Positions 12,578-46,700 of a stretch of DNA of 64,000 nt are shown here, one piece after another. The translations under genes were made by a program, and so were the position numbers. Under the pieces are notes generated by a model that was given only the letters and a program-made list of their open reading frames with translations, was not told the DNA's origin and ran no database searches. Origin of the DNA: Haliotis rubra (taxonomy: Eukaryota). Position 1 is the first letter of the stretch, and every line of letters begins with the position of its first letter. The stretch is from contig NW_025765736.1 of NCBI RefSeq assembly GCF_003918875.1, positions 1,364,001 through 1,428,000 of the forward strand. The letters are read 5' to 3'.

Positions 12578-12634
12578 CATTCAGCTCTCCAACTGGCTCA
12601 TACAGTGTTCAACATAAAGTGTGATTATTCTCAA

Positions 12635-13129: not shown

Positions 13130-13285
13130 AAGGTGGCGCCCCCTGTCGGAATAATTAGCGGTTTCTTAATGACCGTCAAATGACACTACCGACAGTGCCT
13201 TTCAGCGACTATTAATGGGACAACTGATTATAATTATCACACAATGCGGGTGATTATTTGACACGAAGTGTTATCATAATGTTAT
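13130..13285 (-). promoter_or_regulatory. Conserved module C with CTCF-like motif, unit 2
   Basis: Minus-strand CCGACAGGGGGCGCCA at 13134-13149, plus a conserved TAATT/TGACACTA/TGATTA block. Confidence 0.6.
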
Positions 13286-13375
13286 CTGTTATCATAATAG
13301 TATCTGTTATCATAATATATTTTATCATAATATTATCTTTTATCATAACATTATCTTTTATCATAATATTATCTT
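13268..13375. repeat. Minisatellite (TTATCATAAT-based)
   Basis: About six imperfect units expanded from the end of module C. Confidence 0.7.
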
Positions 13376-13773
13376 GGTGAAAGTGCCACCATACACCTGT
13401 TAGGGATAACGGTTCATAGCACCTCGCAGAATTGCCAGGAAAGGGGGGAATAACGGTTCCAAACGATTGACGGATTATTGTACTGTGGTTAACGTTAATA
13501 CCATGTCATTCAGATAATATACCGATTGAACTTGCAGACAATACAATGATTGTTGTCAAACGATGAAACCGCATCAAACCGTCAAACTGATGACCTGGTT
13601 GAACTCACTCGTGCATGGGGGTGAACTTTCGTTAGTGCACGATAATCTTAGGCTCAGTGCTGAATATAACAACCGGAGTTTGCCTGAGGCACGTGCCTTC
13701 AGTAATGACCCCTCAAATAATATCACAGCATTAATTTTGGACTATAGGTCACATTCCTTCATTACTCTTCAAT

Positions 13774-13875
13774 GTATCGCGATGTGACACTCCGCGTGGT
13801 CACGCTCCAGTACAGTCACGTGACATACGGGCACCTGCTGTGATTAGTGTCACAACATCGACTGTCCCAGTTCAA
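13774..13875. promoter_or_regulatory. Conserved distal module A (unit 2)
   Basis: Same motif string; GCACCTGC at 13831-13838. Confidence 0.7.
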
Positions 13876-14861
13876 GACGTGGAAGCACTGGCGGAGGTCG
13901 TTCACGTGGATTTTATATACTTTTTGTGTGTTTATTGTTTGTGTCTGTTCAGAAGGAGTTTGGACAGTGGTGTGCTTTAATGGCGATACTGGACATCAAG
14001 TCGACACCCAGGTATATAGAGAGTTTAAAACATGGAGTTTTCGCCTGCAACTGAAACCCAGCGGGTCTGTCCAACCTGTCTTACCTACTGATTCAGTAGA
14101 AACAGTTAAATTTAGATTTCTTTTGAAATTGAACATGTATTTTACATGGCGACCTTCGGTGGTCAATCGACTGCCTATCACACAAAACTGAATTATGGTA
14201 CAGACCAGTAAACCCGTGAAGATCAGGGTTAGAATTGGTCTTCAGCACATGTCATCGTATCCCAATTGCGTAGCGATTCTCATGCTGTTGACCACTGGAG
14301 TGTCTAGACCAGACTCGATTATTTACATATTGCTGGAATACTGCCGAGTGCGGCGTTAAACAACAACCAAACAGACCAGTAATCCCAGTTCACAATGGAT
14401 TACAGTCAACTTTTCAACAGTTACTGTGTAAGGTTTAACGGCGATGTGTCGGAGAATTCACTGTCGACCGTATGAGTGATTATTGGTGATGACACTTTAA
14501 CCATGACAGAAGCGTTAAAGTCAGTTATTTCAGATTAGGTCGAATGCTTCAAGTGTTGTTAGGGATGTCAGTCGATATGATTTGACTTTAGTTCGATGTC
14601 GTAGCTATCAAAAGGAAGATTTAAAGGAAGCTTATACTAAGTCTAAGTATAAATATACCTTTCCGATCAAGTGGAAGTTTTACCCCTTCAATAACGACGG
14701 AGGGAAAAGAAGAATAAAAAGCTAATGATATATTATGTAATAACTTGCGGTCATCAAATATCGACACTTCAATCCCCAAAACGTGGCAGATCTCAATTCC
14801 TGGAAACCTATTCTGATCAAGGTGTACACAAGTACATATATACCAGTACACCTTGATTAGA

Positions 14862-15023
14862 GTGAGTGAGTTTAGTTTTACGCCGCTTTTAGCAATATTC
14901 CAGCAATATCACGGCGGGGGACACCAGAAACGGGCTTCACACATTGTTCCCATATAGGGAATCGAACCTGGGTCTTCAGCCTGACGAGCGGACGCTTTAA
15001 CCATTAGGCTACCCAACCGCCCC
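14862..15023 (-). mobile_element. tRNA-derived SINE family 1
   Basis: Minus strand: box A TAGCCTAATGG, box B GGTTCGATTCC, tail GCGGCGTAAAACTAAACTCACTCAC. Confidence 0.85.
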
Positions 15024-15216
15024 CCTTCATTAGAACAGGTACATTGTTTGTGTAAACAATTACAACAATGGAACGTAGATGTTTATAAATTATATTTCTT
15101 TAATCAACAAACAATATATCACAGCCCATATATGAGAAGTGTCCTGAATATAAAGCACTATCATGACGTAATCACATGATACAAAATCACAACCATTGTT
15201 CCTAATAAAGTTCAGT

Positions 15217-15246
15217 CAGAGACCGTATACCGATATATGGTCTCTA
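15217..15246. mobile_element. TIR-only remnant (probable excision footprint) of the P-like element
   Basis: CAGAGACCGTATACCGATATATGGTCTCTA flanked by GTTCAGT/GTTCACT; absent from the paralogous copy-4 3' UTR. Confidence 0.7.
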
Positions 15247-15261
15247 GTTCACTGTAGTATT

Positions 15262-16524
15262 TTACCAGGGTCTCCATGGAACCTGTTGTTCTGTCTGAAT
15301 CTGCTGTGAGTAGGACCACGTGCTCTGGAGCCACGATCTAACTCTCGAGTCTTTGTCAACCATTTCTGTTGGCACTTTACAGAGCACTGAATCTGAAAAG
15401 CTGGATGAGGGATAGTGTCCAGTTCTGTGGGTGGACTGTTTGGTAATATCAGGAGAACCAGCATATCCACTGTCTGAGAAGCTGTTGTCCTCCTTCACAG
15501 GAGAAGTGGCCATATATGCATATGCAGTCGGATGTGAATGCTGGGTATTGTGGGAAGGTTCTGCACTCAGTCTCTCATAGCAATTTCTTGTGTTTGACGT
15601 CACAGCCTCTGTTGTCAAGGGCACCTGTTGAATATGTGTCATACATCGAGAGATGTGTTTTCTCAGCTGACGATGTACATTGTCCGACACTCCCGGCAGA
15701 GACTGGATGTAGGAGAAGATTTCTTCAGCACATTTGGGAGAAGCCATGTTGGAATCTGGCTTGAACTGCTTCTTTCACGTGTTGATGTGTTGTGTTGATC
15801 TTCCTGACATTCCTCAGATAATCTACAGTCGTCTCCAGAATCTCAGCCTTCTCCATCTTGTCATAGTTGGGGTCCTGGGAAAATAAGAGATCAATAAGTA
15901 ACCAAGGCATACAACATGAAATAGAAGAAATTTTTAAAAACTCGTAGAAAACGTGAGCTCCTGTTGTGAACATTGAATTATGATTAGATTAGTTTTAAAA
16001 ATCAAGAAATTAAAACATTGCATTGCTACGTGTACATTTAAAACATATACTAACAACTAACCATGTAAACTGTGTAATTTTATACAAAATAAAATGAGGT
16101 TTTTTTCATATTTTAAGCTGATGTACTTACGTTTCGTTGTCGAGCGCCACATACGATGCCTTTGATTTCTGTCAGACTTTGGTTGATTCTGGCTCGCCGC
16201 CGTTTTTCAGCCATTACTTTTCGACCCTGCAGAAAAACATATCAGAATGTAACAACAAATCGAAGGAATCACAATGAAAATTTCAGGTTACTGTTATGAA
16301 GTTGACAAAGCAGAGATTTTATGTTCTAAAACCGACTGGGACACAATCTATTCCCATGTTACCATGAATATTCAAATTAGCCACGTGTCTCAGATGTAAA
16401 CAGGTTCAGGTAGCGTACAGGTTGTTAACAATCTATTTAAAACTTATCATAGAAGACTGATGCTTACCTTTCTTCGGCCCATATATTCACTCTCTGATTC
16501 CAGGTTGTAAAAGTGAGATTCCAT
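15262..16524 (-). pseudogene. Hes: Hes copy 3, frameshifted (exons 16468-16524, 16131-16226, 15262-15874); pseudogene, truncated bHLH-only allele, or sequencing error
   Basis: Extra G at 15736-15738 (catttGGGagaag versus catttGGagaag in the other five copies) gives ...FQHGFSQMC* with the stop at 15725-15727. The downstream frame stays open to WRPW, and promoter and splice sites are intact. Confidence 0.85.
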
Positions 16525-16812
16525 GACTGAGGTGTGTTCAGCTCTGAGAGACAAGTTGGTGTGATGGAACGCTGCCTCCCCGACCCGCCTTTATACCCCC
16601 CGAACTTCCCCTACCCACGCTAATCTATGCACAGTTATGTTTTGACATCTGAATAGCCCGGCGCGATCCGATACACGCAGCCAATCAGCGCACGCCCAGT
16701 TGGCGTGGAGGCACGCGCCGGCTCGCGTTAAACTTCACCCGTAGACAGATGTTCATTTTTACTCCGCGTGACACGAGGAGTTACGTGGATGAGCACCCGG
16801 ACTGTCAACAAT
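16525..16812 (-). promoter_or_regulatory. Hes copy 3 proximal promoter
   Basis: Same block; GGCACGCGCC at 16710-16719; the segment carrying the Su(H)-like site is deleted. Confidence 0.75.
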
Positions 16813-18979
16813 CTGCCTGTCAACGATCTTGTATTTCATTGAGCTAAAGTTAATTTTACCTGTTTGAAGCGTGACACGGGCTATGTCGCATTCCGTCGCC
16901 TACCGTTACCTTGACCTGTAACCAACTGCAAGAGAATCATTAATGCACGGAGGACAGGTGCTTTTCACTTTGCTGCCGTGCATGGAACCACAATGCATAC
17001 ATGCATCCATCTGTCCGTCCGTAGGTCCTAATATCCACCAACATATCCACACACACGCAAGCGTAGAAATCATTTGAAACACTAAATGAAACAGTGTATT
17101 TATCGGTACAACTCCATTTATCAAGAATGTATATTATTTCTTTAAAAACTTCTTATCGTGACATCTTTTTTAAACAAAAATCTGTATAAGATCTCTGCCA
17201 TGAATCCCGCTAACACCCGGTGTCATTGTCAGCATTAAACGGTTACTGTTTATGCTTCAACGTTGACAACCTTCAGATAATGAAAGTGTTAATCCGTATT
17301 AATCCTCTGTAGCTGTCGCCATGAAGATGGGGTCGTCAGACACGTATTCATTATTTGGAAATCTAATTGTAATATTTTACATCGACTTGAAATTTGACAT
17401 GTACTTTGGGTAAAAGTCCTCTTTTGTGCGCAAAATTATCGTTTCAGTTGGGGAACATGATATCATTCGGGTTATCCTCAAACCACTGTGGCAGGGTTTG
17501 GCTATGGCTTTGACGCATCCCGCATTATAGATGAGATAAGTAGAGAGACAATTTTTTGTTTGGAAATCACTGACTTATATGATATATTTACAGCATTAAT
17601 GTTTCTCTAGATCTGTGTTGTGTCGATGAGATAAACATTTGTCAAATGAAACAGTGGTGAGGCAGGGCTGTTACTCACCTCCATGTCAATTTATGTAAGA
17701 GTGTCAGTTACTCACTCCGAGTTATTCATGTACACAGGCCACTACTTTTAATGTTTTACAAATCCCTTATGCCATTCTAAACTCAGACGTCGGGCCAGAC
17801 ATGGTTTGGATAGCGATTATGTGTCAATAATAATACTTATAATTACAGTCTGGTATGGCTATAAGTGTCAGAACACTTGGATAATGTGACTCTTTTCGTG
17901 TCCCCTTATTGAAGCAAATACATTGTTTAAATACGGACGTTAAGGTGCTGGGTTCCGCTCCACCCACCACTTATTTTCAAATTCAAAATTCATACAAAAA
18001 TAAAATATGCAATCCTAACACCCCCTTCAGGTTGCCCAATATTTCGCTCACCTCTCTTTGCATCAAGCACTGAATGGCCTGGACTAACGCTCAGTCTCTG
18101 AATGTATATAATTTTAATTGAAACAAATAACCCAATCTGAATTGAAACAGAGCTTGCCTGGCAGCTGGACTTGGGAGATTCAGAATCTGATGAAACCTAG
18201 ACTTGCTTCATTTAGGGCATTAGCATGGCAGAATGGGTTTCGCGGAATGGAAAATAATACGGCACAGGGACTACTGTAAGACTAAATCGCCTGGCGAGAG
18301 CGAGAGCGAAATAATGTCGGAAAGCGCAAGTAAAATCTCCAAATCATCATCATTATCATCATCATTGGTGCTAGGTGTCCTGTTTGCGAACAGAATTTTA
18401 ACTAGGGATGGAATACTGTTCCAGCATCTAACCTCAACATGAAAGCGATAATAATTGCATGCTTAAGAAAAATTCCATCTGCTTCTGGAGACGATAGTAT
18501 GGCTTCAATATAAACAAATCTTTGAAGTTAAGAATCAAAATGTAAAACTATAAATACTAATTATGTTTTTTTAGTTAATTACAATATTCTTTCATATTCA
18601 TAAGTGCATCCGTGTTTCTGATTTCACAATGACAGTTTTGCAAAATACATACTTCACATTTCTGATGACAATGAAGATTTCAAAGAGCTAAAACGGCTCC
18701 TACTGAAACTGGTTTCTTCAAGGCAACACCATTCAAGACCCTAATAAACATTTTAAACATTGGACATATGTCAATCAAAGGGTACTGACAGATTTGAAAG
18801 CGGTTTTAATTTAGTCTGTAATGAAAAAGAATTGATAAAAAAACTCTTTAATACAATTTGCCCTGGGTATGATAATACACTGCACTCGTTTTCGTTCGAT
18901 ATGATTTTTATGAACTCGAATATTTCCTCACTAGTTTCCTAAAATGGTTTCCCACGAGTGTGGTTGACGTATATCTTTC

Positions 18980-19255
18980 CGTGTCAACACTCTGTGTGTC
19001 ATAAACACGAGGGTATATCACAGATCATTATGACGTCACACAGAGATCTGTGACGTAACGTCATTGTTCACTGTCACCCATCCAGTGATGGAGACTGTTT
19101 GTAATGGTCAGTCTGGTAAAGAACCCCTCTGGGCTGGACAAAACAGCTGATTGAGAATAATTGGCTGACAAGGTATCAAAAATTACACATGCTGTGTTTA
19201 TTCCAAGTTAAGCCTGTTTGGACACATTTACAAGATGGGGACCCTCCCACACGTA
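18980..19255. promoter_or_regulatory. Conserved distal module B, unit 3
   Basis: Near-identical to 12675-12950; TTCCCACG at 18949-18956 adjacent. Confidence 0.65.
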
Positions 19256-20080
19256 CAGAACAGTTGTGAAAGTTAGTTGTGGCCTTTGACCACATATGTA
19301 GGCTGGAATTTACCGTGTGAAAATGGACTCATACTTGAAACTGGGGAAGGTACAGAAAACATTATAAGACGTTTTGCAGATGATAGTCAATACATATAAT
19401 GATCTGACAATAAAAATGCTATCAAACAGGATTAAATCTCGTAATCCAAAACAGAATTTATAAAGAATGATTATGGAGTCAAGTTAGTTCAATTGTAAAA
19501 GCAGTTATGAATTTTTCTCTGACACGACTGGTCATTTAGTTAGCATATCAGCGAAGTACTTTGAAGGGTTACTCTGGTGATAAGCTTTTGTCGAGGAAAC
19601 CATTAGAACCAGTACACGTCTTTTATGTTGCCAATAAACAACTGTTGTCATAGCAACAAAACAATAATTAAACTATAATTAAAATAATTAAAACAATAAT
19701 TAAACTTTAAGCAATAATTAAACTATAATTAAAACAATAACTAAACTTTTGTCGAGGAAACCATTAGAACCAGTACACGTCTTTTAGGTTGCCAATAAAC
19801 TGTTGTCATAGCAACAAAATACAAACAAGAAAATACGTACTCATTTATTTACCCTATATTTACATTATAATTGATGACATTGATTGACATCTCCCTCACT
19901 TCCACTACCAGGTTTACACAGTTTGCGAAATAGATATGTCTAAAACATACTGATTTTAGAAAGACTAATTATGTTTACCCTGTCTCTGCACTAACAAGAA
20001 CATAACCATGGCCCAGCTCATTACTTGCGTTGTGATACCTTTGCGATCTGTCGACTGGAGAACATAAAAAGGAATATACA

Positions 20081-20214
20081 TATACTGGACAAAAATATTT
20101 AGGGATATATGTAAATTTTGAAATTATGAATAATGATGTATTTATTCATTGGCACATTTGATAAAATATCAATCATAAAAATACCAATATCCCTAACTTG
20201 TTTTGTCCAGTATA
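20081..20214. mobile_element. TA-flanked MITE
   Basis: TATACTGGACAAAA...AGGGATAT / ATATCCCT...TTTTGTCCAGTATA inverted ends. Confidence 0.65.
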
Positions 20215-20736
20215 GTATACACATATCTCAGTGAGTCATGTTTAAGTAGGTTTAATAATGTATGATCAATATGAATCAATAATGTTATGATTCAGTACGG
20301 TTTATCACATTAAATATGATTTAATAAGTTCAGTATCATCAATATGAATCAATATAATTCAAACCGCAAATATGATCCAATAATGTTCAATTTGGTCAAT
20401 ATAATAGAATCAAGTCTAACTGCATGCTGTACCAATTTTTTAGATTCGATGTCTAGGTTTTTATCTTGTTACATTAACCTCACTGAGAAAGTGAATAATT
20501 CAAAATGATATGATGATGATGATGCTGATGATGATGATGATGATTTAGTGTTTAACGTTGGCTTCTGGCTGTAGCCAATGTCGCCGACGGGGTATGTGGG
20601 AGCTAATGTAATAATTAATATGTTTATAATAAGGAATAAACCACCATACCCACAAAAATGTAAATGAAGTGGCGTTAACGTACCAGAATTTGGAATAGAA
20701 ACGTTTACAAAATGAGAAACCTAACGCACCTAATAA

Positions 20737-21180
20737 ATACCAAATTGACGGACAAATTGACAGCGTGAACACTAGATACAATTCGAAATGGCTCACTCGC
20801 ATATTGCCACCTGTCGAATACAGTGTTTCACACGATGTCCAGTCAGTTTGGTGAATAACTTCGTGACACTGACACCGTGTTGAAAACAATCGGTTTTTTT
20901 TTGTCACGTGTAATAACTGATTGTCCAGTCAACGCTCCGGACGTTGCAGGAACCATCTGCTGGGCACTGCGACCTTGTGCATCGGAATGCGACCACGTGC
21001 AGGTCCCCGCTGCTTGAAGAAAAGGTGGCGCCCCCTATCGGAATAATTAACGGTTTCCTTATGACCCGCAACTGACACTAACGACTTGGCCTTTCAGCAA
21101 CTACTTATGGGACAACTGATTGTAATTATCAGACAGTGCAGGTGATTATTTGACACCAAACTGTTATCATAATAATGTCA
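20737..21180 (-). promoter_or_regulatory. Conserved module C (extended), unit 3
   Basis: Minus-strand CCGATAGGGGGCGCCA at 21026-21041; the whole ~440 bp is an inverted copy of 27390-27820. Confidence 0.6.
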
Positions 21181-21483
21181 CATAAAGATGCAGCTCACAA
21201 CGAAGCATAGACAGTGGTATTGATGGTTGAGAAAGACTAACTTCTTACAAAAATGTATATTTACAATGGTCTCTTTGAACATTGGATTTAGGGTTAACCC
21301 ATTTTAATCTGTTTCTTGTGTAGCATGTGTTATACATTTACCTTAACTTTTCTGCTACTTAGATTGCATTTACCCATTTTGTTTACCCTTTTCATAGGAC
21401 ATTGATTCATCTCAAAGATATACATATTTCTTATCCAAACCGTAACTTTTCAATCATATATATTTATTTATCTATGTAGCCCC

Positions 21484-21728
21484 GACCCGTGAAGATCCGG
21501 GTTAGAATATTGATTTTCAGTAACCTATGCATGTCGTAAGAGGCGACTAACGGGATCGGGTGGTCAGGCTCGCTGACTTGGTTGACACGTCATCTGTTCC
21601 AAATTGCGCAGATCGATGCTCCTGCTGTTGATCACTGGATTGTCTGGTCCAGATCCGATTATTTACAGACCGCCGCCATATAGCTGGAATATTGCTGAGT
21701 GCGGCGTAAAACTCAACTCACTCACGCA
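21484..21728 (+). mobile_element. SINE family 2
   Basis: GACCCGTGAAGATCCGGG...GTCGTAAGAGGCGACTAA... with the same 3' tail as family 1; TSD CTATGTAGCCCC. Confidence 0.85.
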
Positions 21729-22324
21729 CTATGTAGCCCCGACCGTAGTATCACCATGACAATCTTTATAACAAAAACTAGCTATTTTAATCAATATGTT
21801 TACATTTTGTTGATTTTGTTTATTACCTATTGTTCCATTAAAATATCAAGACAAACATCCTCAATAGAATCTTAACTTGATGCAAGAGTTGGGTTGGATT
21901 CCTTGTTTCAATTTATTCACCAGGGTCTGGGGGATAGTAGTTAGTCATACAGACCCTGAAACAAATACATCCAAGAAAACCCATGGAAGTCTAGATTTCC
22001 GCAGTTTCAGGAATTGAAGAAAGACTTTGGGCTTTTTCTGTTATATTTCATGATTATTTCATATGAACAGTTTATATTAGCCATTTTCATTTCAGAGGCT
22101 ATAAGTTAGTCTAGAGACATAGATGAGGGATCAAATACGACAGACCTGATTTATCAGCGAATCAATCACAGTCTGGAGACTGTTTGCTTTCAAAAGCTGT
22201 CAATGTAAAGTACTTATATGCAGGCGACATTCGTGGGAAATGCCCAAGGAACCGACCTTCTGTACAAGTTTTAACATCCCAATGATAATTCCCAACATTC
22301 CCCCACTCCCCTCCTTAATGTACA

Positions 22325-22425
22325 GCGATGTGACACTTCGCGTTGTCACGCTCGGGTACGGTCACGTGACATACGGGCACCTGCCGTGATTAGTGTCACA
22401 ACTTCGACTGTCCCAGTTCGAGGCT
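22325..22425. promoter_or_regulatory. Conserved distal module A (unit 3)
   Basis: Same motif string; GCACCTGC at 22377-22384; CGTGGGAA at 22232-22239 nearby. Confidence 0.7.
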
Positions 22426-23470
22426 TGGAGACGCTGTGTGGAGGTCGTTCATGACTACCCTGTGTGGATTATATATACTTTCATGTGTGTTTTCATTGTT
22501 TTTGTACATTCAGATGGAGTTTGGACTGAATTGTGTCTTATTGGAAATACTTAATTGGATTACACCCCACGACCCAGACATGAAAAGCGATGCAATCTTT
22601 TATAAAATGTTTCAAACATGGAGAAGTGTGGCAGCAGACATCTGCAAAGCAGCCGGACTGGATTTCATAAACCAATTTGATTTAATTCTTTAATGTTTAA
22701 TTTCTGGTGAACGAATTAATACAATATTGGGTGCTTTGTCAACGTTCCGTGTCCGCTTCGAAATGGCACATATACACGACCATGTCATATTACATGTAGT
22801 TTATTCGCCAACGATACGTTGCCAGTCAACAAAACGATATTTTATTTTTATCGATGGATGGCCATGTTTTGTGGAAGCAAATGGTCAATTGCGTACCTCA
22901 ATGGATACCGTCATGCCCGACCGTTCATTACACCAAATATATCACTGTTTGATATTGGCTGATATGTTCATGAACGGCGTGAATCTCTGGGTTTATTGCA
23001 TTGCATCTGTTAAAATGGAGCGTTTCATTACCACAACGATCAATATGCCGACTCATTGAGCATCTTTGATGACGTCACATTGAAGAAGAAATTATAGGAT
23101 ATTTATATACCGCACATATCCACGCAACTAGTACATGCTCAAGACGCTGATTTTTTTCCCCTCGATCACTGGATGTCTATCTCAACGGCACATCGTATTA
23201 TCAATCTCAACTCCCTGGGGACCATACAAATGAAATACGTCTCAAGTATAGACATTAGTATTTTCATCAGGTGTGTTGTATATGTTGTACAGATACCCCA
23301 GTGACCCTTAAAAATATTTCAACGAACAAAATAACTAAATAATGTTTATTTTATCAACAAATGTATGTTATCACAGTCAGTATCATATATGAAATGTCCA
23401 ATAAACAAAGCACTATTATTACGTATACAAAATCACAACCATTGGTCCTAATAAAGTTCACTGTAGTATT

Positions 23471-35810: not shown

Positions 35811-35964
35811 CCGAGCAAGCAGCATGCACAGACACGTGTGGACGTGATCTACGTATGTACAGATGTGCATTTGACACGGATGTTTTAGTTCAATTTTAGA
35901 TCAATTTTAGTTGAATCCGTATTGTTTTGTATTGTGAAATGACATTAAATTTCTGTAATAAATG

Positions 35965-36125: not shown

Positions 36126-37749
36126 TAATATATTTCGCAATAATTTAGCACGTGGGACTAAAAACATAAACTGAAGTGGTACACCTGGTATTGTGGGATT
36201 ATTTAAATGTAAAAACAAACAAATATCATGTGCTTTTTGTGCAACACATTCACAATGTTTGTGACTTGTAATTAAAAAACACGTTTCAAATTATTTACGT
36301 TTTGTTTTTGGGAGCAAAATTACAGGCGTGCACTTTCTTTCCTTCGTCAGTATATGTTCGTTTTCGTTATTCTTTTCTTCTCCTTGTGAAAACATAGAAA
36401 ATGCAACCCATGTTCCCTATCAAGCCATGGGAAACATGATATATACCGGAATCTATTTCCAACCAGTGTTACACTTCCGAAGGAGTGCCACGATAACATG
36501 TTATCAGTTTGAACTTTGACTTCAGATCATGTACACGATCCAGTGGTTAAGTTTTCGCAGATATACTGGTTCCTTTCGACCAAACGCAGATAGTTGATAA
36601 TGCATACGTACTGTGTATATATAAAATATGACTCCCCTATGAAACGCATGTTGTTATCGGGTCGCGTGCCCTACACTATCGGGTCGACCTTGGGGTCAAG
36701 TGAAGATAGTGAAAGGGGACTAAGTCAGAAGCACTAGATGACATCGTCTTCAACTAGATTTGGAGTATATGTGATTCAGTCCAGACGATACCGTTGTGCA
36801 AAACATTTTGTGATAAATGGAACTGGAAGAGCTTTACTTTACCTCACATGACTACATTTTACCCAGATCATACCCAACAAAAGTTATTGGTATGTTGATG
36901 GAACGTTTTTTCTCTGAACGTCCATTGTGATATAAAACACAATGTTGATCTGGAAATATGTCTTCTCTATGAGCGAAAACATTATAGAATGAATGAATGA
37001 AAAACTTTATACAATGAATGAGTGACACCAGAAATGGGCTTCACACATTTTACCCATGTAGGGAAATACAGTGAAGGAAGGAAGGAATTAGCGAAAACCT
37101 TATAGAATGAATGAATGAATGAATGAATGAATTTATACCATGAATGAGTGAATGAGTGAGTTTGATTTTACGCCGCTTTTAGAAATATTCCAGCAATATC
37201 ACGGCGGGGGACACCAGAAATGGGCTTCACACATTTTACCCATGTGGGGAAATACAGTGAATGAATTTAATTTGTCTGTTTTTGTATCCAGTTCTTGTGT
37301 ATTTTGTTTAAATGATATATGTACTGGTGAGGTATTGATATAAGCAGAGTTCTGCTTGTTTACCGAACCAGATTCTTTAGGGATAAAAATATGTTTAAAC
37401 CACAATGAATGAAGGAATGAATGGAGGAAGGAACGAATGAGCGAAAACCTTATAGAATGAATGAATGAATGAATGACACAAAATATACAAACAATACTAT
37501 GATAGGCAAATGACTGACGAATTTAAAGTTCTGTATACTGATCGGGAATCTACCAACATGTTGGACTGCTATAGTTCACAATGAGTAATGAGTGATAATT
37601 CAATGTCGCATTTGTATATACCACACGATGGAAACCAACTATCGGACGAACCTGACTGGACTTGTTAAATCCCCCGTGCCCTAATCTACTTTTAATGTCG
37701 TTATCAAATAAGGGGATCTTATCTCATTTTAACCAAATTTGTCAACTAT

Positions 37750-37972
37750 CAGTTAGATTGTCCGGACCAGCGAGACTCAACGCCGGAGAGGCCATTTACA
37801 GACAATCTTCATCACTGGATGGGTGGGCGTGAACAATGGTATTACGTCATTGTCTCAGTGTGACGTCACAGCAGTGTGTGATATATCCTTGTAGTGTTAT
37901 AATGACGGTAAGTGTCGTGGGGTGTTGACACTAATGGACTTACTCCGCTCTGTCGGACGGGGAAATCAACTA
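37750..37972. promoter_or_regulatory. Conserved distal module B, unit 5 (inverted)
   Basis: Reverse complement aligns to 48373-48600; TGACGTCA at 37861-37868. Confidence 0.6.
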
Positions 37973-39353
37973 AAGAGGTCTTCAACACTTCATTAGACAG
38001 TTATGGAGACGGGGACATTTGTTGATAGGGACAATTGGGGATGACTTGTAAATAAACGAGGTATCAGGGCCAACAAGTGTTCAATGCTTGTTTTATTTAT
38101 CTAGCGTCACAGAAGCGTAATATACAGTTGTCTATTGACCCTGTTGTAATTTGACACTGAAATATTTGTTGGGCTGGCATTGTCGTGGTTCCAATACGAC
38201 ACCTCATTAGACTGACATAAAGCTTTCACGTAAACTCAGCAACAGCGTTTGTAACACACAAATAAGAAACCGAATTTTTAAAGGCATATAAAAAATCCTA
38301 AGTGTTAATGTCCTTTATTCAAATTGTTTAAAAACGCAGTTTTCAATTCATATTGTCGTTTCAAGGACATATGAATCATATTTATGTTAATGTATTATAC
38401 AATAATATTACATTGCACGTGCATATATTTTATTAAAAAAAATTATTTAAATTTAAATACAGTATACATAGACTTTGACAGATGGAACATATTCTGAAGT
38501 CTTTGCAAGTATTTAATTATGTAGAGTTAGATATAGGTAAATCAGTCCCAAAACTACAATTGACGTGATGTAAACTGTAGGCAAAACGTAAGCATAGAAT
38601 ATTCAACAGTGATTTTTAATAGAAAATAGTTCCTTCTCAAAACTGGAAGAAACTCATTCATACTAATGGTTTCCAGTTTTTTAGTCGATGAAAATGCTTG
38701 TCTATGAAACTTAATATTTGACTGACATGGACATCAGAAAGATGACATTCAAACGAAATATCTGTTTTAAACACTTACGCAAGCAACACAAAATATTTAA
38801 ATACTCACAGATAAAGAATATATTTTTACTAAATTTACCCACATAACACCTGTGTGTTGAGTCAGAAATCAAAAAGACATGCACATGTTAATTGTAAAGT
38901 ATTTGCCATACATTTATGTTGTTGATTTGTCGACTGAAAGGGGAATGTTTTATGTGGGTTTCTACATCTCTACTGATGACATGATTGCGTTTATCAGTCG
39001 ATTCTGTCTTGAAGAGATACGTTTTGGACATTCTATCAAGCAATGATAATAGTTTTCAGTTGGTGAACCAAAATGAACTTGATAGCGATCTGGCATCCAT
39101 TGCCATGATAAACATTACTTCGGGAGACACTGCAGGTGGTGGTTTATTACCGAGGTGTCCATTATGAGCGGTGGGGACTGGTATCAGGTGGGGGGTGTCA
39201 TTCAAAACACACCTTGTTTTGGGGTTTGTTGTCACAAATGACTAATCGTGTTCAAAGGGTACGGAAATTAAAAAAAGAGGAATTTACCTGCAACAGTATA
39301 TTCTGCTCATTTCTACTGTATGCCTTGACTTTAGGTTTATCAAACTTTGGGTT

Positions 39354-39478
39354 ATATACTCATGCCAATAATGGTTGTCACCCCATTTTTGTTAATTGGA
39401 GAGGGGTGTGGGGTGTGAGGTGTGTGTGTGGGGGGTGGGGGTGGGGAGGGGTGAGAACCATTATTGGCATGAGTATAT
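39354..39478. mobile_element. Tc1/mariner-type MITE
   Basis: ~30-bp TIR TACTCATGCCAATAATGGTTGTCACCCC with TA flanks; second copy at 47132-47232. Confidence 0.75.
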
Positions 39479-40794
39479 TGTTGAAAATAGGCATGCATCT
39501 TACGGCCATTGTATTTGACTATGATTATCTCGGACACAGTCAAATACATTTTTGTGTTTAAAAACAAGTTCAAATGTTGACATCTTGGCTCAACGCCATT
39601 TGAAAATAGCGGCTCCGAATACAAATTAACCCTTTACATATGTACAGTGAGTAAGGGACTTAAAATTTAAAATTTCATTGGCATTTCAGACATATCGTGA
39701 ATATGAAAGCTATATATTGATAAATATCATTCTTAACGATAATAATACTTGTCAACAAAGGACAGTAAAATAACTAGAATATCACATATTTATATTAAAA
39801 ACAAACAAGTAACATTTCAGGTTAATGGTGAAGGAGTACGTATATACTCAGAGATGTTGTGATCCTAACAGTAAAGAAGAAGGGGGGTGGACAAAATCCC
39901 AACTGGACAAAATGCCATAGCACCAAATTTCTTTGCACTTTAGACAAAATCCCACACCAAACTAACAAACAAAGGACAAAATCCTATTTATTTTAATCAT
40001 GTTTTTTTTATGACAGAGGCCAGTGAGCTAAGTATATAGTAGAATGTTTTGATGTTTTCACGAATGAGTTAAAAGAGAGTTATCAATAAAACTCTCTTCC
40101 TTATATGTGTATCACTTCCAAATGCCATTCAGTTCTATAACATGGCATAAAATGCACACACCTTTGACAAAATATCAGAGATGGCTGGGTCATAAGTAAA
40201 AAACGAGCGACAATTTACGAAACCGTATTTTGCATATACAGAAAGTGAGGCAGTTCCCACCTAAGACTAACATTTCATCACAGAAATGATGTATATATAT
40301 TAACCTAGAATATAATTAGAAGCGACAAAACCCTTTCCACATTCATAAGAAATCTCTGCTAAAAGCAGAGTCGATTGTGACTGTCATGAGCATATACTTG
40401 TTTCAGCCTTACAGACGCATGATGTTGTTTGTAAACAAATTGCGTCTGGACCAGACAATCCAGTGGTTGTCACCATGCGATACGATGAAAGAGCATGTGT
40501 TTATGAATCACTATGAAATAGTGATGATACCAGGTGTTCGCGAAAAGATGGTTATAATCGGAACAGGGCTAAGGTAATCAAGATTCGTCTCTGATTGGGT
40601 CTGAAAATACATGTGGCATTTTGGTGAATTTTACAATACTGTGATGCTGACGTATTCCATATATTGGGTGGTAAACCACAAAGAACGTTCAGTTCCCCTC
40701 CAAAAGTGTTTACTCACTGGAATAAAGCCGGCGACGAATACATCAGTGTCACCTTCAAATAAAACATTTTGCCGATGTGTTGCATTTCAAAACA

Positions 40795-41123
40795 CAATAC
40801 CCCAGCCAACATTCCTCCACTCTCACAGTCATCAGCCCGCTATAAAACCCCGTTGATGATGTTGTGACACGCCGGAACAATGACAGTGACGGATGGCGGG
40901 CACGAGGTGTCAAGTCGACAAGCGCCATCGACGCCCATCGTTATTGGATACATCCACTCAACCATGGGCAACACAACCACCATTAGCTCGGAGCGCTCCT
41001 CTCGGTAAAATGTCTCCCGTTATCTCGCGTGTGTACTATCGTCACGTGTGCCGTGATAAGAGGGCAAGTGCACTGATTTAGTGTCACGTGATCCTATTAG
41101 GGGAAGTCCCGTGGGGAATCCCC
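40795..41123. promoter_or_regulatory. Module E plus diverged module A (unit 5)
   Basis: ~170 bp almost identical to 48848-49015, followed by GGGCAAGTGCACTGATTTAGTGTCA and two kB-like sites. Confidence 0.6.
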
Positions 41124-42687
41124 GACACTGACAGTTGCAGATAATGTTTATCACACAAGTGTCAGTCGACTGGGGGAACTTTAAATGTCCTATTAATTGT
41201 TAGATGATGCGAAATTCGAGCTTCATTTAATAAACATTATGGCTCACCTTTTGTAACCTGCAGCTAGGGACATATTTAATAAAATAAATCATCCACATTA
41301 TGTAATTCGATCCACAATCGATCACACTATATATATATATTATATATAAAAATCCATTTAAATTGAAAAGGAGTCCCAGTCAGATGGGAAATTCAAAACC
41401 TGAGGGAATCTAGACTTGCTTCTTTTGGGGTTTTAGGGAGGGCTAGGCAGTAGGGAAAATATTGTGGTTCAGGGACGGAGACAGACCACTCATTCTCCAC
41501 CCATCCTCAGCCAGATGGTTGAAAAAATTGTATGCTGTTGAGTTCCCTACACTTGAAAACTGGATTTGACCAAAGCTTACATACCGTTACGTAACGTTAC
41601 TAGGCTGTAGCGTTAATCGTTTTGGTCCAAACCCCATCTATGATATCCGTGTGAAATATGCTGACGTACAAAAGAAAGTACACATCATTTTAGGGGGATT
41701 ATTTTCGAAAACACCGATCTTGATACACGTCACAAACAATGTGAACATCACATTATGTACACTAAATGTTCTGACTGGGAGAATAATAACACAGTACAGG
41801 TGTGTACTTCTATGTACGTCAGTGTACACCACCATCTAATAACTATTCCATGTTTGTTTTACCTTCAACCACCATCAATCGTAGAAGCACATTTTCTTTT
41901 GGACTGCTATATAATGTTTGTATTTAACTTTAAGCATAACTTAAATCCATGTTTGTCAACGATCTGGAGTTGAGTTATCGCCATGTTCATACATCTGATA
42001 AAAACAAATCCATTCCAAGCTCCTTGCAGCTCGTTCTAGGGTTCCTTTGTAGCATAATGCTATTAACCCATGCAAAGAGACGAAAGAAACTTTACCTCTG
42101 TGTTTCATTTCATCATGATAACTGAAAATATCAAAGTTTCGACATAATATCTCAGATATGAGGATATTACCCTATTGAACCATTTACCTCATTTTGCCAC
42201 AAAAATCCCAACCACAGACTGTTGCATGATTGAGTGAGTGAATTTAGTTTTACGCCGCTTTTCGCAATATTCAAGCAAGATCACGGCGAGAGATACCAGA
42301 AATGGGATTCACACACTGTACCCATGTGGGGAATCGAACCCGGGTCTTCGGCGTGACGGGCGAGTACTGTAACAAGTAGGCTACCCCACTGCCCCGTTGA
42401 ATGAATGAGTGGTATGTATTTACAGTTTTCAGTTACATACAAAACACAAACTGGTATACGTTTCCCCTCAGATTTAACCAACATGTTTTGTGGTAAATAC
42501 ACCCTAGCTTAGATATGGGAATAAATATACATCAACGTACTATGAATGGAATTATTCATTTTGATCTATTTGTATTCAACGCGATTTCATGCAGTGAAAG
42601 AAAATGGCATTTGATCACTGATACAACATCCCCATACAGTTTGTGGTTGTCTGTGACATGTTCCGTTGGTGATGATATCAAACTTAA

Positions 42688-42853
42688 CTGACTGAATGAG
42701 TTTGGTTTTACACCGCTTTTAGCAATATTCCAGCAACATCACGGCGGTGGACACCAGAAATGGGCTTCACACATTGTACCCATGTGGGAATTCGAACCCG
42801 GGTCTTCGGCGTGACGAGCCAACGCTTTAACCATTAGGCTACCCTACCGCCCC
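42688..42853 (-). mobile_element. tRNA-derived SINE family 1
   Basis: Full length; 14-bp TSD GATATCAAACTTAA. Neighbouring copies at ~42230-42395 and 42990-43124. Confidence 0.9.
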
Positions 42854-43215
42854 GATATCAAACTTAAGTCTATAGTCTCCATATGTACGAGCGGTTCGAA
42901 CCGGCATTCTCGGCTGGAACGCACAAACTACTGGATTAGCTGTTTCCTCTGTGACTCTGTGAGAAACCTAGAGAAAAGATATGTAAGGTTTCAGCAATTT
43001 TCCTGCAATATCACGGCGGGGGACACCAGAAATGGGATTCACACATTTTACCCATGTGGGGCATTGAACCCGGGGCTTCTGTGTGACGAAGAAACGCTTT
43101 ATCTACTGGGCTACCCCACCGCCCTCAAAATATATATAGAACAATAAATCAGTGTAGCGTTAGATTTTATTCAGGTATCACAGATTATGGCACTTTATAG
43201 AGACAGCAACACTCA

Positions 43216-44189
43216 TCACCAGGGCCTCCATGGAACTTGTTGCTCCGTCTTGATTTGTTGGGAGTAAGACCACGTGCTCTGGAGCCACGCCCTAACTCTC
43301 GAGTCATCAAAGTTTTTATGGATTCTGCTTGACTCCATTTTACAGAGTTCTGAATCTGAGAGATTGGAAGGGTGATAGTGTCCAGTTCTGTGGGTGGACT
43401 GTTTGGTAATATCAGGAGAACCAGCATATCCACTGTCTGAGAAGCTGGTGTCTTCCTTCACAGGGGAAGTGTCCACTGTCCCGCTCATGTACGCATGTGC
43501 AGCCGGATGTGGATACTGGGAATTGTGGGAAGGTACTGGATTCAATCGTTCGTAGCACTGACTCGTGTATGACATCACATCCTCTGTTGATGACGTCACG
43601 GGCACCTGCTGAATGTGTGTCATACGTCGAGAGATGTGTTTTCTCAGCTGACGATGTACATTGTCCGACACTCCCGGCACAGACTGGATGTAGGAGAGGA
43701 TTTCTTCAGCACATTTGGAGAAGCCATGTTGGAATTTGGCTTGAACTGCTTCTTTCACGTGTTGATGTGTTGTGTTGATCTTCCTGACATTCCTCAGATA
43801 ATCTACAGTCGTCTCCAGAATCTCAGCCTTCTCCATCTTGTCATAGTTGGGGTCCTGGGGAAAATGGAAGAATAACTATAAGTACATGTTGTGTGGAGGG
43901 TATACAATCATAGTAACTGTAAAAATATGACTCCTATAGTAATTGTATTTAATTTTTTATATAATAAACCAAAATACTTAAGTGAAATTATCAAGGTATT
44001 AAGAAATATTACACAATATTTGACTTTAAAAGTTCCACTTACATTTTGTTGTTGCGCCCCACAGACAATTCTTTTGATGTCCAATAAACTCTGGTTGATT
44101 CTGGCTCGTCGGCGCTTTTCTGCCATCAATTTTCGGTCCTTTCTCCCTCCCATATTGTCCGATTCCGTGTATCTGTCGAATGATTCCAT
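43216..44189 (-). CDS. Hes: Hes family bHLH-Orange repressor, copy 6 (~261 aa; two exons, 44043-44189 and 43216-43854; intron 1 absent)
   Basis: MESFDRYTESDNMGGRKDRKLMAEKRRRARINQSLLDIKRIVCGAQQQN is continuous, followed by one GT-AG intron, then DPNYDKMEKAEILE...WRPW*. Confidence 0.95.
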
Positions 44190-44516
44190 GACTGAGGTGT
44201 GTTCAGCTCTGAGAGGCAAGTTGGTGTGATGGAACGCTGCCTCTCCGACCCGCTTTTATACCCCCCGACATTCCCCTACCCACGCTAATCTATGCACAGT
44301 TATGTTTTGACATCTGAATTGCCCGGCGCGATCCGATACACGCAGCCAATCAGCGCACGCCTTGGTAAGTGGTGGCACGCGCCGGCTCGCGTTAAACTTC
44401 ACCAGGAGACAGATGTTCTTCTCATGACCCGACAACGATGATATTCGTCAGGAGCACCGGCCATCTTGCTTAGCGTGACACGAGGAGTTACGTGGACGAG
44501 CACCCGACCTTTCAAC
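44190..44516 (-). promoter_or_regulatory. Hes copy 6 proximal promoter
   Basis: Same block; TGGCACGCGCC at 44373-44383. Confidence 0.8.
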
Positions 44517-45440
44517 AAGTATTATTTGTAAATTTCTACTGAGAACGTGTCCCGTTGTGCCGTCACTGAGAATCTAACGTTCCGACATGCCGTTATTTTC
44601 ACCTTTGGTTTGAGACTTAACGGAAAGTGCGCGAAACGCATCTTCCTATTTTTAAGTAGATGAAAACATTTACCATTGACAAAGTTAAGCTTTTACATCA
44701 ATTTCAACCACGACATACGAGTGAAATTTTGTTGTAGGCTGCCGTCAGCTCTCAGCAAACTCTGACTTAAAAAATTATAGAAAAATATATAGAAAGGGTC
44801 AATTTTCGTGTGTTACTTGACCGCGCAGTGCAACCGTTTGTATGCATGAGACATACATTATTATTATTAAAAATTATTTTTACAGGCATACTGTTCACAA
44901 TCATCGTCGGATAAATTGTAATTTGTATACTACTTATAATATAATTTGTTTGGAGAACTGTTGCCACATTACGTTATCTTTTAGGCCAATGAAATACGTT
45001 TAAACGAAAAAAGAAATTGCTAATTTCGTGAGTAGGATGGTCAGAACGAAACTGACACAGAAAAGCCTCTAATGACAAAGTTTATGACTTTGGAGAAAGT
45101 TTTACTGCGGTAGCAAATACTTGGAAAATCTTGTCTGTAGACATTTCATTACTATTTGATGTACTGAAGGTACTGACATATTTACATGCCAGAGTAAAGC
45201 CTTAAAAGATTACTACGTCACTGATATAACTACGCCCATATTAAATCCATATTGTTTTGAACTTCCCCTTCATCCACTCCTTTCTGTTTATCAAAAGACC
45301 TATATGAAGAAAGTCTTTCACAGGTTCTGAATTTCCCATCTTACTGGGGCTCCTTTTGTCAAATTAAAATAACATATTTGTTTATATCAAAAGTATATTG
45401 ATGCAGAGACTAAGCACAAGTCTACCCTTATTATTCTATG

Positions 45441-45442
<2 letters not shown>

Positions 45443-45491
<49 letters not shown>
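45443..45491. repeat. (TA)n microsatellite
   Basis: Seen directly; also (TGA)n at 20512-20544 and (AC)n at 27180-27202. Confidence 0.9.
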
Positions 45492-45492
<1 letters not shown>

Positions 45493-46479
45493 CCTATTTT
45501 TACATTTGAAATAAACACACATGAGCAAATCCATATAAAACATGTCTACTTTTGTTAAACCCATGTAGCACTCGCAATGGCAACAAGGAGGCGATTTAAT
45601 CCTAATTAATCCTGTTAATCAGTCGCCAAGTTAATTAAGTAACAACACCTTGTTAGACTCAACAGACTAGTGTCACGGTAGTCACAGTACTGCACTAGGT
45701 TCACACGTCGCCTAATATAGCAATGATTTGTCATAGAAACGAAAACTACTGAAACCTATATGGCCACGGACAGCTGGATCAATTCCACCGGAGGGTCTTG
45801 TTAAATATCCAATCTCTCAGCAGCAGCAACAATGTCAGTTTCGAAATTTCGGTTTATGGATTCGATAACCGGCAACAACATGGTTCAACTATACATAGTT
45901 TGAAATATGTTTATGTGTTTTTGATAGATTTCAAATTTTAGATTATTGCCCTCACCTGCACGAACACACACACACACACACACCACACACACCCACACCA
46001 CACGCACGCACGCACAGACAAACACACGCGTGTGTGTGTGTACCTTGTGATCGAATTGTTATTTAACGTCATATTGAACTGTTTGTTTACCTCGTGATCG
46101 AATTATTCCGTTGTGTCATATCGAACTGTTTGTTCAGGGTGATTGAACTCCTTCAAAATTGTGGAAATGAAAAGATCACGTGGAATTTTTATATGAAACG
46201 TTTAAATCTTTAAGTTATATTTTCCAAATGACACATGACCATTTGTTTGACTGTTTTTAACACCACCACTTGACTAGGCCTAAATTGGGTTCAACGTGAC
46301 TTTGGCGGGAGTTATTTCCAAAACAGTCATTATTTTTGTGTCGATATGTTTCAGGTTCAGCACGCTGGAGTGGTCTCCGTAAAATACATGTCAGTACAGA
46401 CGAAGTGAAATCTGGCAGATCCTGAACCCTCCAGACCGTAAACTGTAAACATTTCCGTGTCAGATCAACAGTTCAATTG

Positions 46480-46700
46480 TATGATAATTGCTATCAAATG
46501 TATGATAAATAGCCCGAATACGGAAAGTCGTTAGTGTCAATTCCGCCGGATAATATCCCCGTTAATTAATCCCGCTTGGCGGCGACTGGGGGTTTAATCA
46601 TGTCACGTGACCCAGCACCATCTGGGCCAAGATTCGTGAAGCGGGACGCTACAGCAAGCACGTGCATGTGTACGGCTAGTGGTCAACACGTGACTGGACG
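46480..46700 (+). promoter_or_regulatory. Diverged module C, unit 6
   Basis: AAGTCGTTAGTGTCA...CCGTTAATT followed by CCGCTTGGCGGCGA (46572-46585) at the CTCF-motif position; several CACGTG. Confidence 0.45.

What the first reader, a model, noticed from the sequence alone, without database searches (positions are those of the whole stretch)
13134..46587. CTCF-like motif between Hes paralogs, with an orientation flip around copy 4
Seen: CCGA(C/T)AGGGGGCGCCA in module C on the minus strand at 13134 and 21026 and on the plus strand at 27527 and 35791. Weaker plus-strand matches lie at 46572 (CCGCTTGGCGGCGA) and 3817 (ACTCCAGACGGCGCCA). Known: this matches the bilaterian CTCF core, and motif orientation directs loop extrusion in vertebrate clusters such as the protocadherins. 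Inference: per-gene insulation, with copy 4 sitting between divergent sites as at a domain boundary. This would be a rare test case for CTCF orientation grammar in a spiralian.
Basis: partly seen in the sequence, partly recalled or inferred. Interest (0 to 1): 0.7.

Follow-up and report, generated by a model that had tools for sequence, protein, structure and literature searches.

The report
Conserved intergenic element in abalone Hes cluster
The four CTCF-like motifs are real, but each is one small box inside a strongly conserved 150-450 bp non-coding element that sits between tandem Hes genes in four abalone species, most likely a shared regulatory module, and comparison between species does not support an orientation-based CTCF insulator grammar.

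Summary
Observation confirmed. CCGAYAGGGGGCGCCA occurs exactly at 13134(-), 21026(-), 27527(+) and 35791(+). These are the only matches to a CTCF core consensus in the 64-kb window.

The four hits are not independent. All lie in one repeat, "module C", which has five copies between six same-strand Hes genes of Haliotis rubra. One partial stray copy lies elsewhere in the genome.

Module C is a constrained non-coding element. Its ~200-bp core is 97% identical between H. rubra and H. asinina orthologues, against 57-75% for the flanks. The order of three antisense then two sense copies, flipping at the Hes4 orthologue, recurs in all four abalone species examined.

The CTCF-like word family is about 8-fold over-represented in the H. 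rubra genome, so a CTCF-type site is plausible. Within the module, however, the box is only averagely conserved. It has been lost independently about five times, while neighbouring blocks (GTTAGTGTCA, TAATT) never change. Only H. rubra keeps both boxes flanking Hes4 intact.

Published data for echinoderms, flies and an annelid show no CTCF orientation pattern.

Best reading: a duplicated multi-site cis-regulatory element with a semi-dispensable CTCF-like box. The flip is an old inverted duplication. Function was not tested.

The parts
46414..46744 (+). 'Up' copy of module C, about 2 kb upstream of Hes6. It is diverged (about 68% identical to the other copies). The box position reads CCGCTTGGCGGCGA at 46572, which is not a CTCF-consensus match.
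   Evidence: Profile HMM hit, E=4.5e-52; blast; alignment with orthologues in H. rufescens and H. asinina. The H. rufescens orthologue has CCGCTAGGTGGCGCCA.
35643..35885 (+). Module C copy M65 (short form), antisense to the genes and 1.7 kb upstream of the Hes5 start. Box at 35791-35806.
   Evidence: The box is intact in all four species.
27373..27819 (+). Module C copy M54 (long form, about 440 bp), antisense to the genes and 2.4 kb upstream of the Hes4 start. Box at 27527-27542. The core 27392-27590 is 97% identical to the H. asinina orthologue.
20738..21186 (-). Module C copy M43 (long form), in the same sense as the genes and 2.3 kb downstream of the Hes4 3' end. Box at 21026-21041. With M54 it forms a 443-bp, 89%-identical inverted repeat around Hes4.
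12909..13289 (-). Module C copy M32, in the same sense as the genes and 2.0 kb downstream of the Hes3 3' end. Box at 13134-13149 (C variant). It carries a GTGGGAA (Su(H)-like) word not seen in the other copies.
23470..24970 (-). Hes copy 4, the gene flanked by the inverted pair of modules.
   Evidence: Hairy_orange domain in the last exon; paralogue alignment over 23470-24970.
863..44518 (-). Span of the six tandem Hes genes, all on the minus strand: Hes1 863-2911, Hes2 7731-9251, Hes3 15261-16911, Hes4 23470-24970, Hes5 32085-33943, Hes6 43216-44518.
3817..3832 (+). ACTCCAGACGGCGCCA, a chance partial match that is not part of the element.
   Evidence: No module similarity above shuffled controls; no HMM hit; at least 2 mismatches to the consensus.

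Best explanation
Module C is a constrained non-coding element of the abalone Hes cluster. It has a ~150-200 bp core and extends to ~440 bp in two copies. One copy lies in each of five successive intervals from GLTP-Hes6 to Hes3-Hes2. It spread with the tandem gene duplications and is older than the split of the four Haliotis species compared. I read it as a multi-factor cis-regulatory module, either an enhancer or silencer or possibly an enhancer-blocker, that acts on the neighbouring Hes genes. Its invariant blocks carry homeodomain-type TAATTA, TALE-type TGTCA and GATA-type TGATAA words. The long form adds E-boxes and N-boxes (CACGTG, CAGATG, CAGGTG, CACAAG). The CTCF-like box CCGATAGGGGGCGCC is one further site next to a TAATTA word. 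It is probably bound by CTCF or another multi-zinc-finger protein, and it can be lost from individual copies. The orientation flip most likely reflects one ancient inverted duplication of the module across Hes4. That produced a symmetric inverted repeat at +2.4 and -2.3 kb, and the 'gene + sense module' unit was then duplicated in tandem. The copies are still partly homogenised by gene conversion. Shown here: the anatomy, copy number, conservation, the flip being ancestral, decay of the box, and genome-wide enrichment of the word. Inferred: regulatory function, which factors bind, and how the flip arose.
For: The family is confined to the cluster: a direct DNA search of the 1.38-Gb genome finds only four copies, and the model and HMM searches add the diverged 'up' copy plus a stray 1.1-kb duplicate of it. 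The M54 core is 97% (H. rubra vs H. asinina) and 95.5% (H. rubra vs H. rufescens) identical, while flanks are 57-75% and unalignable respectively. The same order of antisense, antisense, antisense, then sense, sense, flipping at the Hes4 orthologue, holds in H. rufescens, H. cracherodii and H. asinina. The spacing is also the same in H. asinina (2.4 kb upstream, 2.2 kb downstream). The element is non-coding: indels of 5, 14 and 37 bp. It shows no Rfam hit and no stable or covarying RNA structure. GTTAGTGTCA and the TAATT word are invariant in all 19 aligned copies. The box fits the CTCF core consensus, and that word family is about 8-fold enriched genome-wide, mostly in unrelated flanks. The box is intact in 12 of 17 copies, far more than neutral decay would leave. 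Paralogues cluster by lineage in a tree, which indicates gene conversion, including between the inverted pair.
Against: There is no functional data of any kind. No ATAC, ChIP or Hi-C data were available, and no RNA run holds the element. The transcription-factor assignments rest on short consensus words recalled from general knowledge, not on matrix scans. Gene conversion inflates similarity between paralogues, so only the cross-species comparison speaks for constraint. Whether H. rubra encodes CTCF was not tested here; the literature reports CTCF orthologues in three molluscs (PMC10658182, citing Heger 2012). A 97%-identical 200-bp block is unusually strong conservation for an ordinary enhancer, so another function cannot be excluded.
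Confidence: 0.6

Rival explanations
1. The boxes are CTCF sites that insulate each Hes gene, and their orientation (two reverse, then two forward) makes copy 4 a loop-extrusion domain boundary of the vertebrate type.
For: The box is a good consensus match, and such matches lie only inside the modules in the 64-kb window and in every orthologous locus fetched. The word family is enriched genome-wide with the canonical Y at the next position. Module orientation is conserved in four species. CTCF-like motifs are enriched at squid TAD borders (PMC9023564).
Against: The box is broken in one of the two Hes4-flanking modules in each of H. rufescens (GGGGGAGCC), H. cracherodii (AGGGTGCGC) and H. asinina (four substitutions within 10 bp), although the rest of each module is intact. 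Box conservation is only average within the core: 60 of 141 10-mer windows are better conserved. There is no module between Hes2 and Hes1. The conserved block is about 10 times longer than a CTCF footprint. No orientation pattern is seen in echinoderms or flies (PMC13317027), or in the annelid Dimorphilus, where the motifs are mostly in promoters (PMC7854359).
Confidence: 0.07
2. The module has no function of its own. It is ordinary intergenic DNA that looks conserved because the copies are kept alike by gene conversion among tandem and inverted repeats.
For: Paralogues cluster by lineage rather than by position. Species-specific substitutions are shared by M54 and M43 in H. asinina and in H. 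rubra.
Against: Conversion within a genome cannot explain identity between species. The M54 core is 97% (H. rubra vs H. asinina) and 95.5% (H. rubra vs H. rufescens) identical while adjacent DNA is 57-75% identical or unalignable. Several 10-mers are invariant in all 19 copies, including the old 'up' paralogue.
Confidence: 0.1
3. The core is a small non-coding RNA gene, or the promoter or first exon of an unannotated transcript.
For: Very high conservation of about 150 bp. Its orientation is independent of the Hes genes. Two low-depth contigs (depth about 2) in runs guessed to be RNA cover 27388-27519.
Against: No Rfam family matches. Folding z-scores are -0.27 and -1.2. The consensus structure has 5 pairs and essentially no covariation. 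No run on record as RNA holds the element. Depth-2 contigs in runs of uncertain type are compatible with contaminating DNA.
Confidence: 0.07
4. Module C is a remnant of a low-copy mobile element that inserted in both orientations.
For: It occurs in both orientations. One partial copy lies on another contig.
Against: There are only five cluster copies plus one stray. The stray is part of a 1.1-kb segmental duplicate that also includes non-module flank. No terminal inverted repeats are shared by the copies. The copies sit at orthologous positions and orientations in four species. No ORF is present.
Confidence: 0.03

Closest known systems
Conserved non-coding elements and shared enhancers of tandem developmental gene clusters (for example the intergenic enhancers of the Drosophila E(spl) complex and vertebrate Hes/Her clusters)
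   Same: Short intergenic blocks conserved far above their flanks. They sit between tandem bHLH-Orange repressor genes and are dense in homeodomain, GATA and E-box or N-box words. They function independently of orientation.
   Different: Here one element family is repeated once per intergenic interval, is homogenised by gene conversion, and forms a symmetric inverted repeat around one gene. No activity data exist. The classical paired Su(H) site architecture was not found in the core.
CTCF binding sites (bilaterian core CCASYAGRKGGCRSY) at vertebrate clustered loci such as protocadherin promoters and Hox boundaries
   Same: The box is a 14-15 bp match to the core. There is one site per intergenic interval. 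The orientation switches inside the cluster. The motif family is enriched genome-wide in this species.
   Different: Binding is unknown. The box is embedded in a much longer conserved block. It has been lost repeatedly from individual copies. Orientation-dependent looping has not been shown in any non-vertebrate (PMC13317027, PMC7854359).
CTCF motifs in open chromatin of the annelid Dimorphilus gyrociliatus (PMC7854359)
   Same: A spiralian whose genome has abundant canonical CTCF motifs in regulatory DNA, usually as single motifs, with no directional arrangement between neighbours.
   Different: There the motifs are mostly at promoters. Here they lie 1.7-4 kb from the nearest transcription start, inside a distal element.

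Membership tests
CTCF binding site | Sequence matches the CTCF core consensus | tested here: met
   All four sites match CCNNYAGRKGGCRC exactly, and they are the only such matches in 64 kb. The consensus came from general knowledge. No position weight matrix was available.
CTCF binding site | The organism encodes a CTCF protein | not tested
   No CTCF reference sequence could be obtained without typing one from memory. The literature reports CTCF orthologues in three molluscs and in squid (PMC10658182, PMC9023564).
CTCF binding site | The motif family is used genome-wide (over-represented, with canonical flanking preference) | tested here: met
   1,522 matches against about 160-210 expected on both strands. 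The backwards control gave 97 against about 130-160 expected. Of 20 sampled sites, 17 have unrelated flanks, and the next base is Y in 16 of 18 independent sites.
CTCF binding site | The motif is conserved more than the surrounding sequence | tested here: not met
   The 10-bp core of the box is average for the module, with 60 of 141 windows better conserved. It is broken in 5 of 17 copies, while GTTAGTGTCA and TAATT never change. It is still far better kept than neutral flanks.
CTCF binding site | Occupancy by CTCF (ChIP, CUT&Tag or footprint) | not testable with these tools
   No such data set was found for abalone.
Orientation-dependent loop-extrusion boundary (vertebrate type) | A divergent pair of intact sites at the boundary, conserved between species | tested here: not met
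   Module orientation is conserved in four species. However, both Hes4-flanking boxes are intact only in H. rubra. One of the pair is broken in each of H. rufescens, H. cracherodii and H. asinina.
Orientation-dependent loop-extrusion boundary (vertebrate type) | An insulation minimum or loop anchors in contact maps | not testable with these tools
   No Hi-C or Micro-C data were accessible.
Conserved non-coding cis-regulatory element | Cross-species conservation well above the flanks at an orthologous position | tested here: met
   Core identity is 97% and 95.5%, against flanks of 57-75% or unalignable. Positions and orientation are orthologous in four species.
Conserved non-coding cis-regulatory element | Not coding and not a structured RNA | tested here: met
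   Indels are not multiples of three and there is no ORF. There is no Rfam hit. Fold z-scores are -0.27 and -1.2. There is no covariation.
Conserved non-coding cis-regulatory element | Open chromatin and reporter activity | not testable with these tools
   No ATAC or reporter data.
Transposable element | Many dispersed copies with terminal repeats or target-site duplications | tested here: not met
   Six copies in 1.38 Gb, five of them in this cluster. No shared terminal inverted repeats.

The most novel reading that the evidence does not exclude
The box is a genuine binding site for CTCF, or for another cohesin-docking multi-zinc-finger protein of spiralians. Under this reading, the conserved arrangement of three antisense then two sense modules splits the Hes cluster into two regulatory sub-domains with Hes4 at the hinge. 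That would be the first orientation-dependent CTCF-type architecture outside vertebrates. The naturally broken boxes in sister species would serve as built-in loss-of-function alleles.
Probability: 0.06. Interest if true: 0.8.

Novelty: new member of a known kind. Interest (0 to 1): 0.36.

Why it matters
Spiralian gene regulation is poorly mapped. This locus offers a compact, well-defined test object. It has a 150-200 bp near-invariant element repeated once per interval in a Hes cluster, with both orientations present. Natural variants in sister species have lost only the CTCF-like box. The locus can therefore separate three questions experimentally: whether the element is an enhancer, whether CTCF binds it, and whether orientation matters. 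The roughly 8-fold genome-wide excess of the canonical CTCF word in abalone is a useful pointer that a CTCF-type motif is in use in gastropods. Still, the element is a conserved non-coding element of a familiar kind. The comparative evidence argues against the more exciting orientation-grammar reading.

Tried and rejected
- **RNA gene.** Rfam over the whole window found nothing. Single-sequence and alignment folds showed no signal.
- **Expression.** The run search found no RNA holder. Laying contigs showed only relatives' DNA, plus two depth-2 contigs in runs of uncertain type. This is not evidence of transcription.
- **Transposon.** Copy number and the terminal-repeat search were both negative.
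- **Degenerate sixth copy between Hes2 and Hes1, around the 3817 site.** Local alignment scored no better than shuffles and there was no HMM hit.
- **Other genomic CCGAYAGGGGGCGCC sites.** There are three, all in unrelated contexts.
- **Bacterial promoter/terminator scan.** Irrelevant for a eukaryote and disregarded.
- **Heger et al. 2012.** The paper is not held in the library, so CTCF presence in molluscs is cited second-hand.
- **Search for the H. rubra CTCF gene.** Not done. No reference protein was available by id, and I did not type one from memory.
- **Proper CTCF matrix scan.** Not possible because no matrix is held. An IUPAC consensus from general knowledge was used instead.
Full report
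**Observation.** The pattern CCGAYAGGGGGCGCCA matches exactly at 13134-13149(-), 21026-21041(-), 27527-27542(+) and 35791-35806(+). Shuffles expect 0.01 matches. A CTCF-type core consensus, CCNNYAGRKGGCRC, finds these four sites and nothing else in the 64-kb window. The same holds for CCNNYAGRKGGCGC with one mismatch allowed. The four sites align with each other over much more than the motif. They therefore descend from one ancestral sequence and do not count as four independent occurrences.

**Setting.** Six ORFs with a Hairy-Orange domain, all on the minus strand, mark the last exons of six tandem Hes genes. Self-comparison gives the gene spans:

| Gene | Span |
|---|---|
| Hes1 | 863-2911 |
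| Hes2 | 7731-9251 |
| Hes3 | 15261-16911 |
| Hes4 | 23470-24970 |
| Hes5 | 32085-33943 |
| Hes6 | 43216-44518 |

A duplicated GLTP gene lies beyond Hes6. A protein search returns a 100% match to a Haliotis rubra protein, with 73-93% matches in H. rufescens, H. cracherodii and H. asinina.

**The element.** A smaller second shared piece is listed under things noticed in passing. A profile HMM built from all copies finds five copies in the window:

| Copy | Coordinates | Form |
|---|---|---|
| up | 46414-46744(+) | diverged |
| M65 | 35643-35885(+) | short |
| M54 | 27373-27819(+) | long, about 440 bp |
| M43 | 20738-21186(-) | long, about 440 bp |
| M32 | 12909-13289(-) | intermediate |

- There is no copy between Hes2 and Hes1.
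- The weak site at 46572 sits at the box position of the diverged "up" copy.
- A direct DNA search of the 1.38-Gb genome finds only four copies.
- A sequence-only covariance model finds the five copies plus one partial copy on contig C2424. That copy belongs to a 1.1-kb segmental duplicate of window 46481-47634, with no Hes gene within 20 kb.
- M54 and M43 are 89% identical over 443 bp in inverted orientation. They lie almost symmetrically around Hes4, 2.4 kb upstream of its start and 2.3 kb downstream of its end.

**Comparison with other species.** I fetched the orthologous clusters of H. rufescens (L005, L006, L009), H. cracherodii (L041, L008) and H. asinina (L012, L011, L040, L007, L010).

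- All three have the same layout, read in the direction of the genes. After GLTP (seen directly in H. rubra and H. asinina) come the antisense module copies, three where the upstream end was fetched, then the Hes4 orthologue, then two or three sense copies.
- The H. asinina pair around the Hes4 orthologue also lies at 2.4 and 2.2 kb.
- The flip is therefore ancestral to these species. It is not specific to H. rubra.
- For the M54 orthologues, the core 27392-27590 is 97% identical between H. rubra and H. asinina. The flanks are 57% and 75% identical.
- Against H. rufescens the core is 95.5% identical and the flanks do not align.
- The element is therefore under purifying selection.
- A tree of the long copies groups paralogues by lineage. 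This shows gene conversion among copies, including the inverted pair. Conversion explains part of the similarity between paralogues. It cannot explain conservation between species.

**What the element is not.**
- It is not coding. Copies differ by indels of 5, 14 and 37 bp, and there is no ORF.
- It is not a known or structured RNA. There is no Rfam hit. Folding z-scores are -0.27 and -1.2. The alignment fold gives 5 pairs with no real covariation.
- No run on record as RNA holds it. Laying contigs gave only relatives' DNA and two depth-2 contigs in runs of uncertain type.
- It lacks transposon hallmarks.

**The CTCF-like box.**

*In its favour:*
- It fits the core consensus.
- The word family CCNNYAGRKGGCGC occurs 781+741 times in the genome. 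Markov models of order 1-4, trained on 264 kb of this genome, expect about 80-106 per strand. The backwards control occurs 52+45 times against 64-80 expected.
- Of 20 sampled genomic sites, 17 lie in unrelated flanks.
- The next, unselected base is T or C in 16 of 18 independent sites, as in the canonical motif.
- So a CTCF-type word does seem to be in use in abalone. One falling by chance inside a 200-bp conserved core is unlikely.

*Against its being the point of the element:*
- In 17 aligned copies the 10-bp core of the box is only averagely conserved for the module. 60 of 141 10-mer windows are better conserved.
- GTTAGTGTCA and the TAATT word are invariant in all 19 copies aligned, including the old "up" paralogue.
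- The box is intact in 12 of 17 copies. Its breaks are shown below.

| Copy | Sequence at the box | Change |
|---|---|---|
| H. rufescens M54 | GGGGGAGCC | broken |
| H. cracherodii M43 and its recent duplicate | AGGGTGCGC | broken |
| H. asinina M43 | CCGATTGGTCGTGCC | four changes in 10 bp, within an otherwise intact core |
| H. asinina M32 | not recorded | two changes |
| "up" copy, H. rubra and H. asinina | not a consensus match | lost; H. rufescens keeps a textbook CCGCTAGGTGGCGCC |

In each of the three other species, one of the two boxes flanking the Hes4 orthologue is broken. The "divergent pair around copy 4" exists only in H. rubra.

**Literature.**
- CTCF orthologues are reported in three molluscs, and CCCTC-like motifs are enriched at squid TAD borders. 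No directionality has been established there (PMC10658182, PMC10658181, PMC9023564, PMC13652810).
- In echinoderms, CTCF motifs at domain borders show no orientation pattern. Those authors conclude that the vertebrate mechanism is derived, as also appears in flies (PMC13317027).
[quoted passage not shown] It is mostly in promoters, usually single, and shows "no clear directional arrangement", including in the Hox cluster (PMC7854359).
- An abalone genome paper with Hi-C data does not address CTCF binding (PMC13544226).

**Interpretation.** The best-supported reading is that module C is a constrained, duplicated, multi-site cis-regulatory element of the Hes cluster. The following rests on my reading of short consensus words, not on a matrix scan. 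The invariant blocks carry homeodomain-type (TAATTA, twice), TALE-type (TGTCA, twice) and GATA-type (TGATAA, twice) words. The long form adds bHLH E-boxes and N-boxes (CACGTG twice, CAGATG, CAGGTG, CACAAG), which fits cross-regulation among bHLH factors. The CTCF-like box is one further site. It is plausibly bound by CTCF or another multi-zinc-finger protein, is under selection in most copies, and is dispensable in some. I did not test it, but it is a reminder that CTCF need not be the binder. The flip is most simply explained as one ancient inverted duplication of the module across Hes4, followed by tandem duplication of the "gene + sense module" unit. An element that works independently of orientation would tolerate that. 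Nothing in the comparative data requires, or supports, an orientation grammar.

**Verdict.** The element is a new member of a known kind, a conserved non-coding element in a developmental gene cluster. It has some unusual features: near-invariance over about 200 bp, one copy per interval, and a conserved symmetric inverted pair around one gene. The naturally broken boxes in sister species make it a convenient experimental object.

Noticed in passing
G000:C2424:353540-354620 (loci L047, L050): A 1.1-kb segmental duplicate of window 46481-47634 (84-96% identical). It carries two thirds of the 'up' module and lies on another contig, with no Hes gene within 20 kb.
   Followed up: partly
window 6118-6233, 13765-13990, 22311-22551: A second shared intergenic piece ('module D'), 79-86% identical between copies, about 1-1.5 kb downstream of the 3' ends of Hes2, Hes3 and Hes4. 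It is absent downstream of Hes5 and Hes6. The 13765-13990 and 22311-22551 copies also align to H. asinina and H. rufescens.
   Followed up: no
whole genome G000: The CTCF-type word CCNNYAGRKGGCGC is about 8-fold over-represented (1,522 matches). One variant, CCGGTAGAGGGCGC, recurs often and probably sits in a repeat family. Three of 20 sampled CCACCAGGTGGCGC sites share a repeat.
   Followed up: partly
L005:6473-6646 (H. rufescens 'up' module): This orthologue carries a textbook CTCF core, CCGCTAGGTGGCGCC. H. rubra and H. asinina read CCGCTTGGCGGCGAC at the same place. Because the paralogues share the H. rufescens states, this is most simply a loss in the H. rubra + H. asinina lineage.
   Followed up: partly
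window 26900-27080 and 27760-27927: Very high-copy dispersed repeats. Contig depths reach 10^4-10^6 in relatives' DNA runs. They directly flank M54, and the second abuts the end of the long module.
   Followed up: no
window 35990-36110: A tRNA-derived, SINE-like sequence (the complement of a GGTTCGAATCC-type B box) about 100 bp beyond the end of M65 (35885).
   Followed up: no
window 55608-56225 and 61358-61973: Two copies, 86% identical, of a glycolipid-transfer-protein (GLTP) exon upstream of the Hes cluster. H. asinina has GLTP in the same position.
   Followed up: no
window 20738-21186 versus 27373-27819, and orthologues: Concerted evolution between the inverted pair. H. asinina M54 and M43 share species-specific substitutions (for example GGGCAAG and CATAGGAAAACC) that the H. 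rubra pair lacks. In the tree, the North Pacific species' modules group by lineage.
   Followed up: partly
window 13075-13110 (M32): Only this copy carries GTGGGAA, a Su(H)/CSL-type core word, just 3' of the box. The others read GCGGGGA at that place.
   Followed up: no
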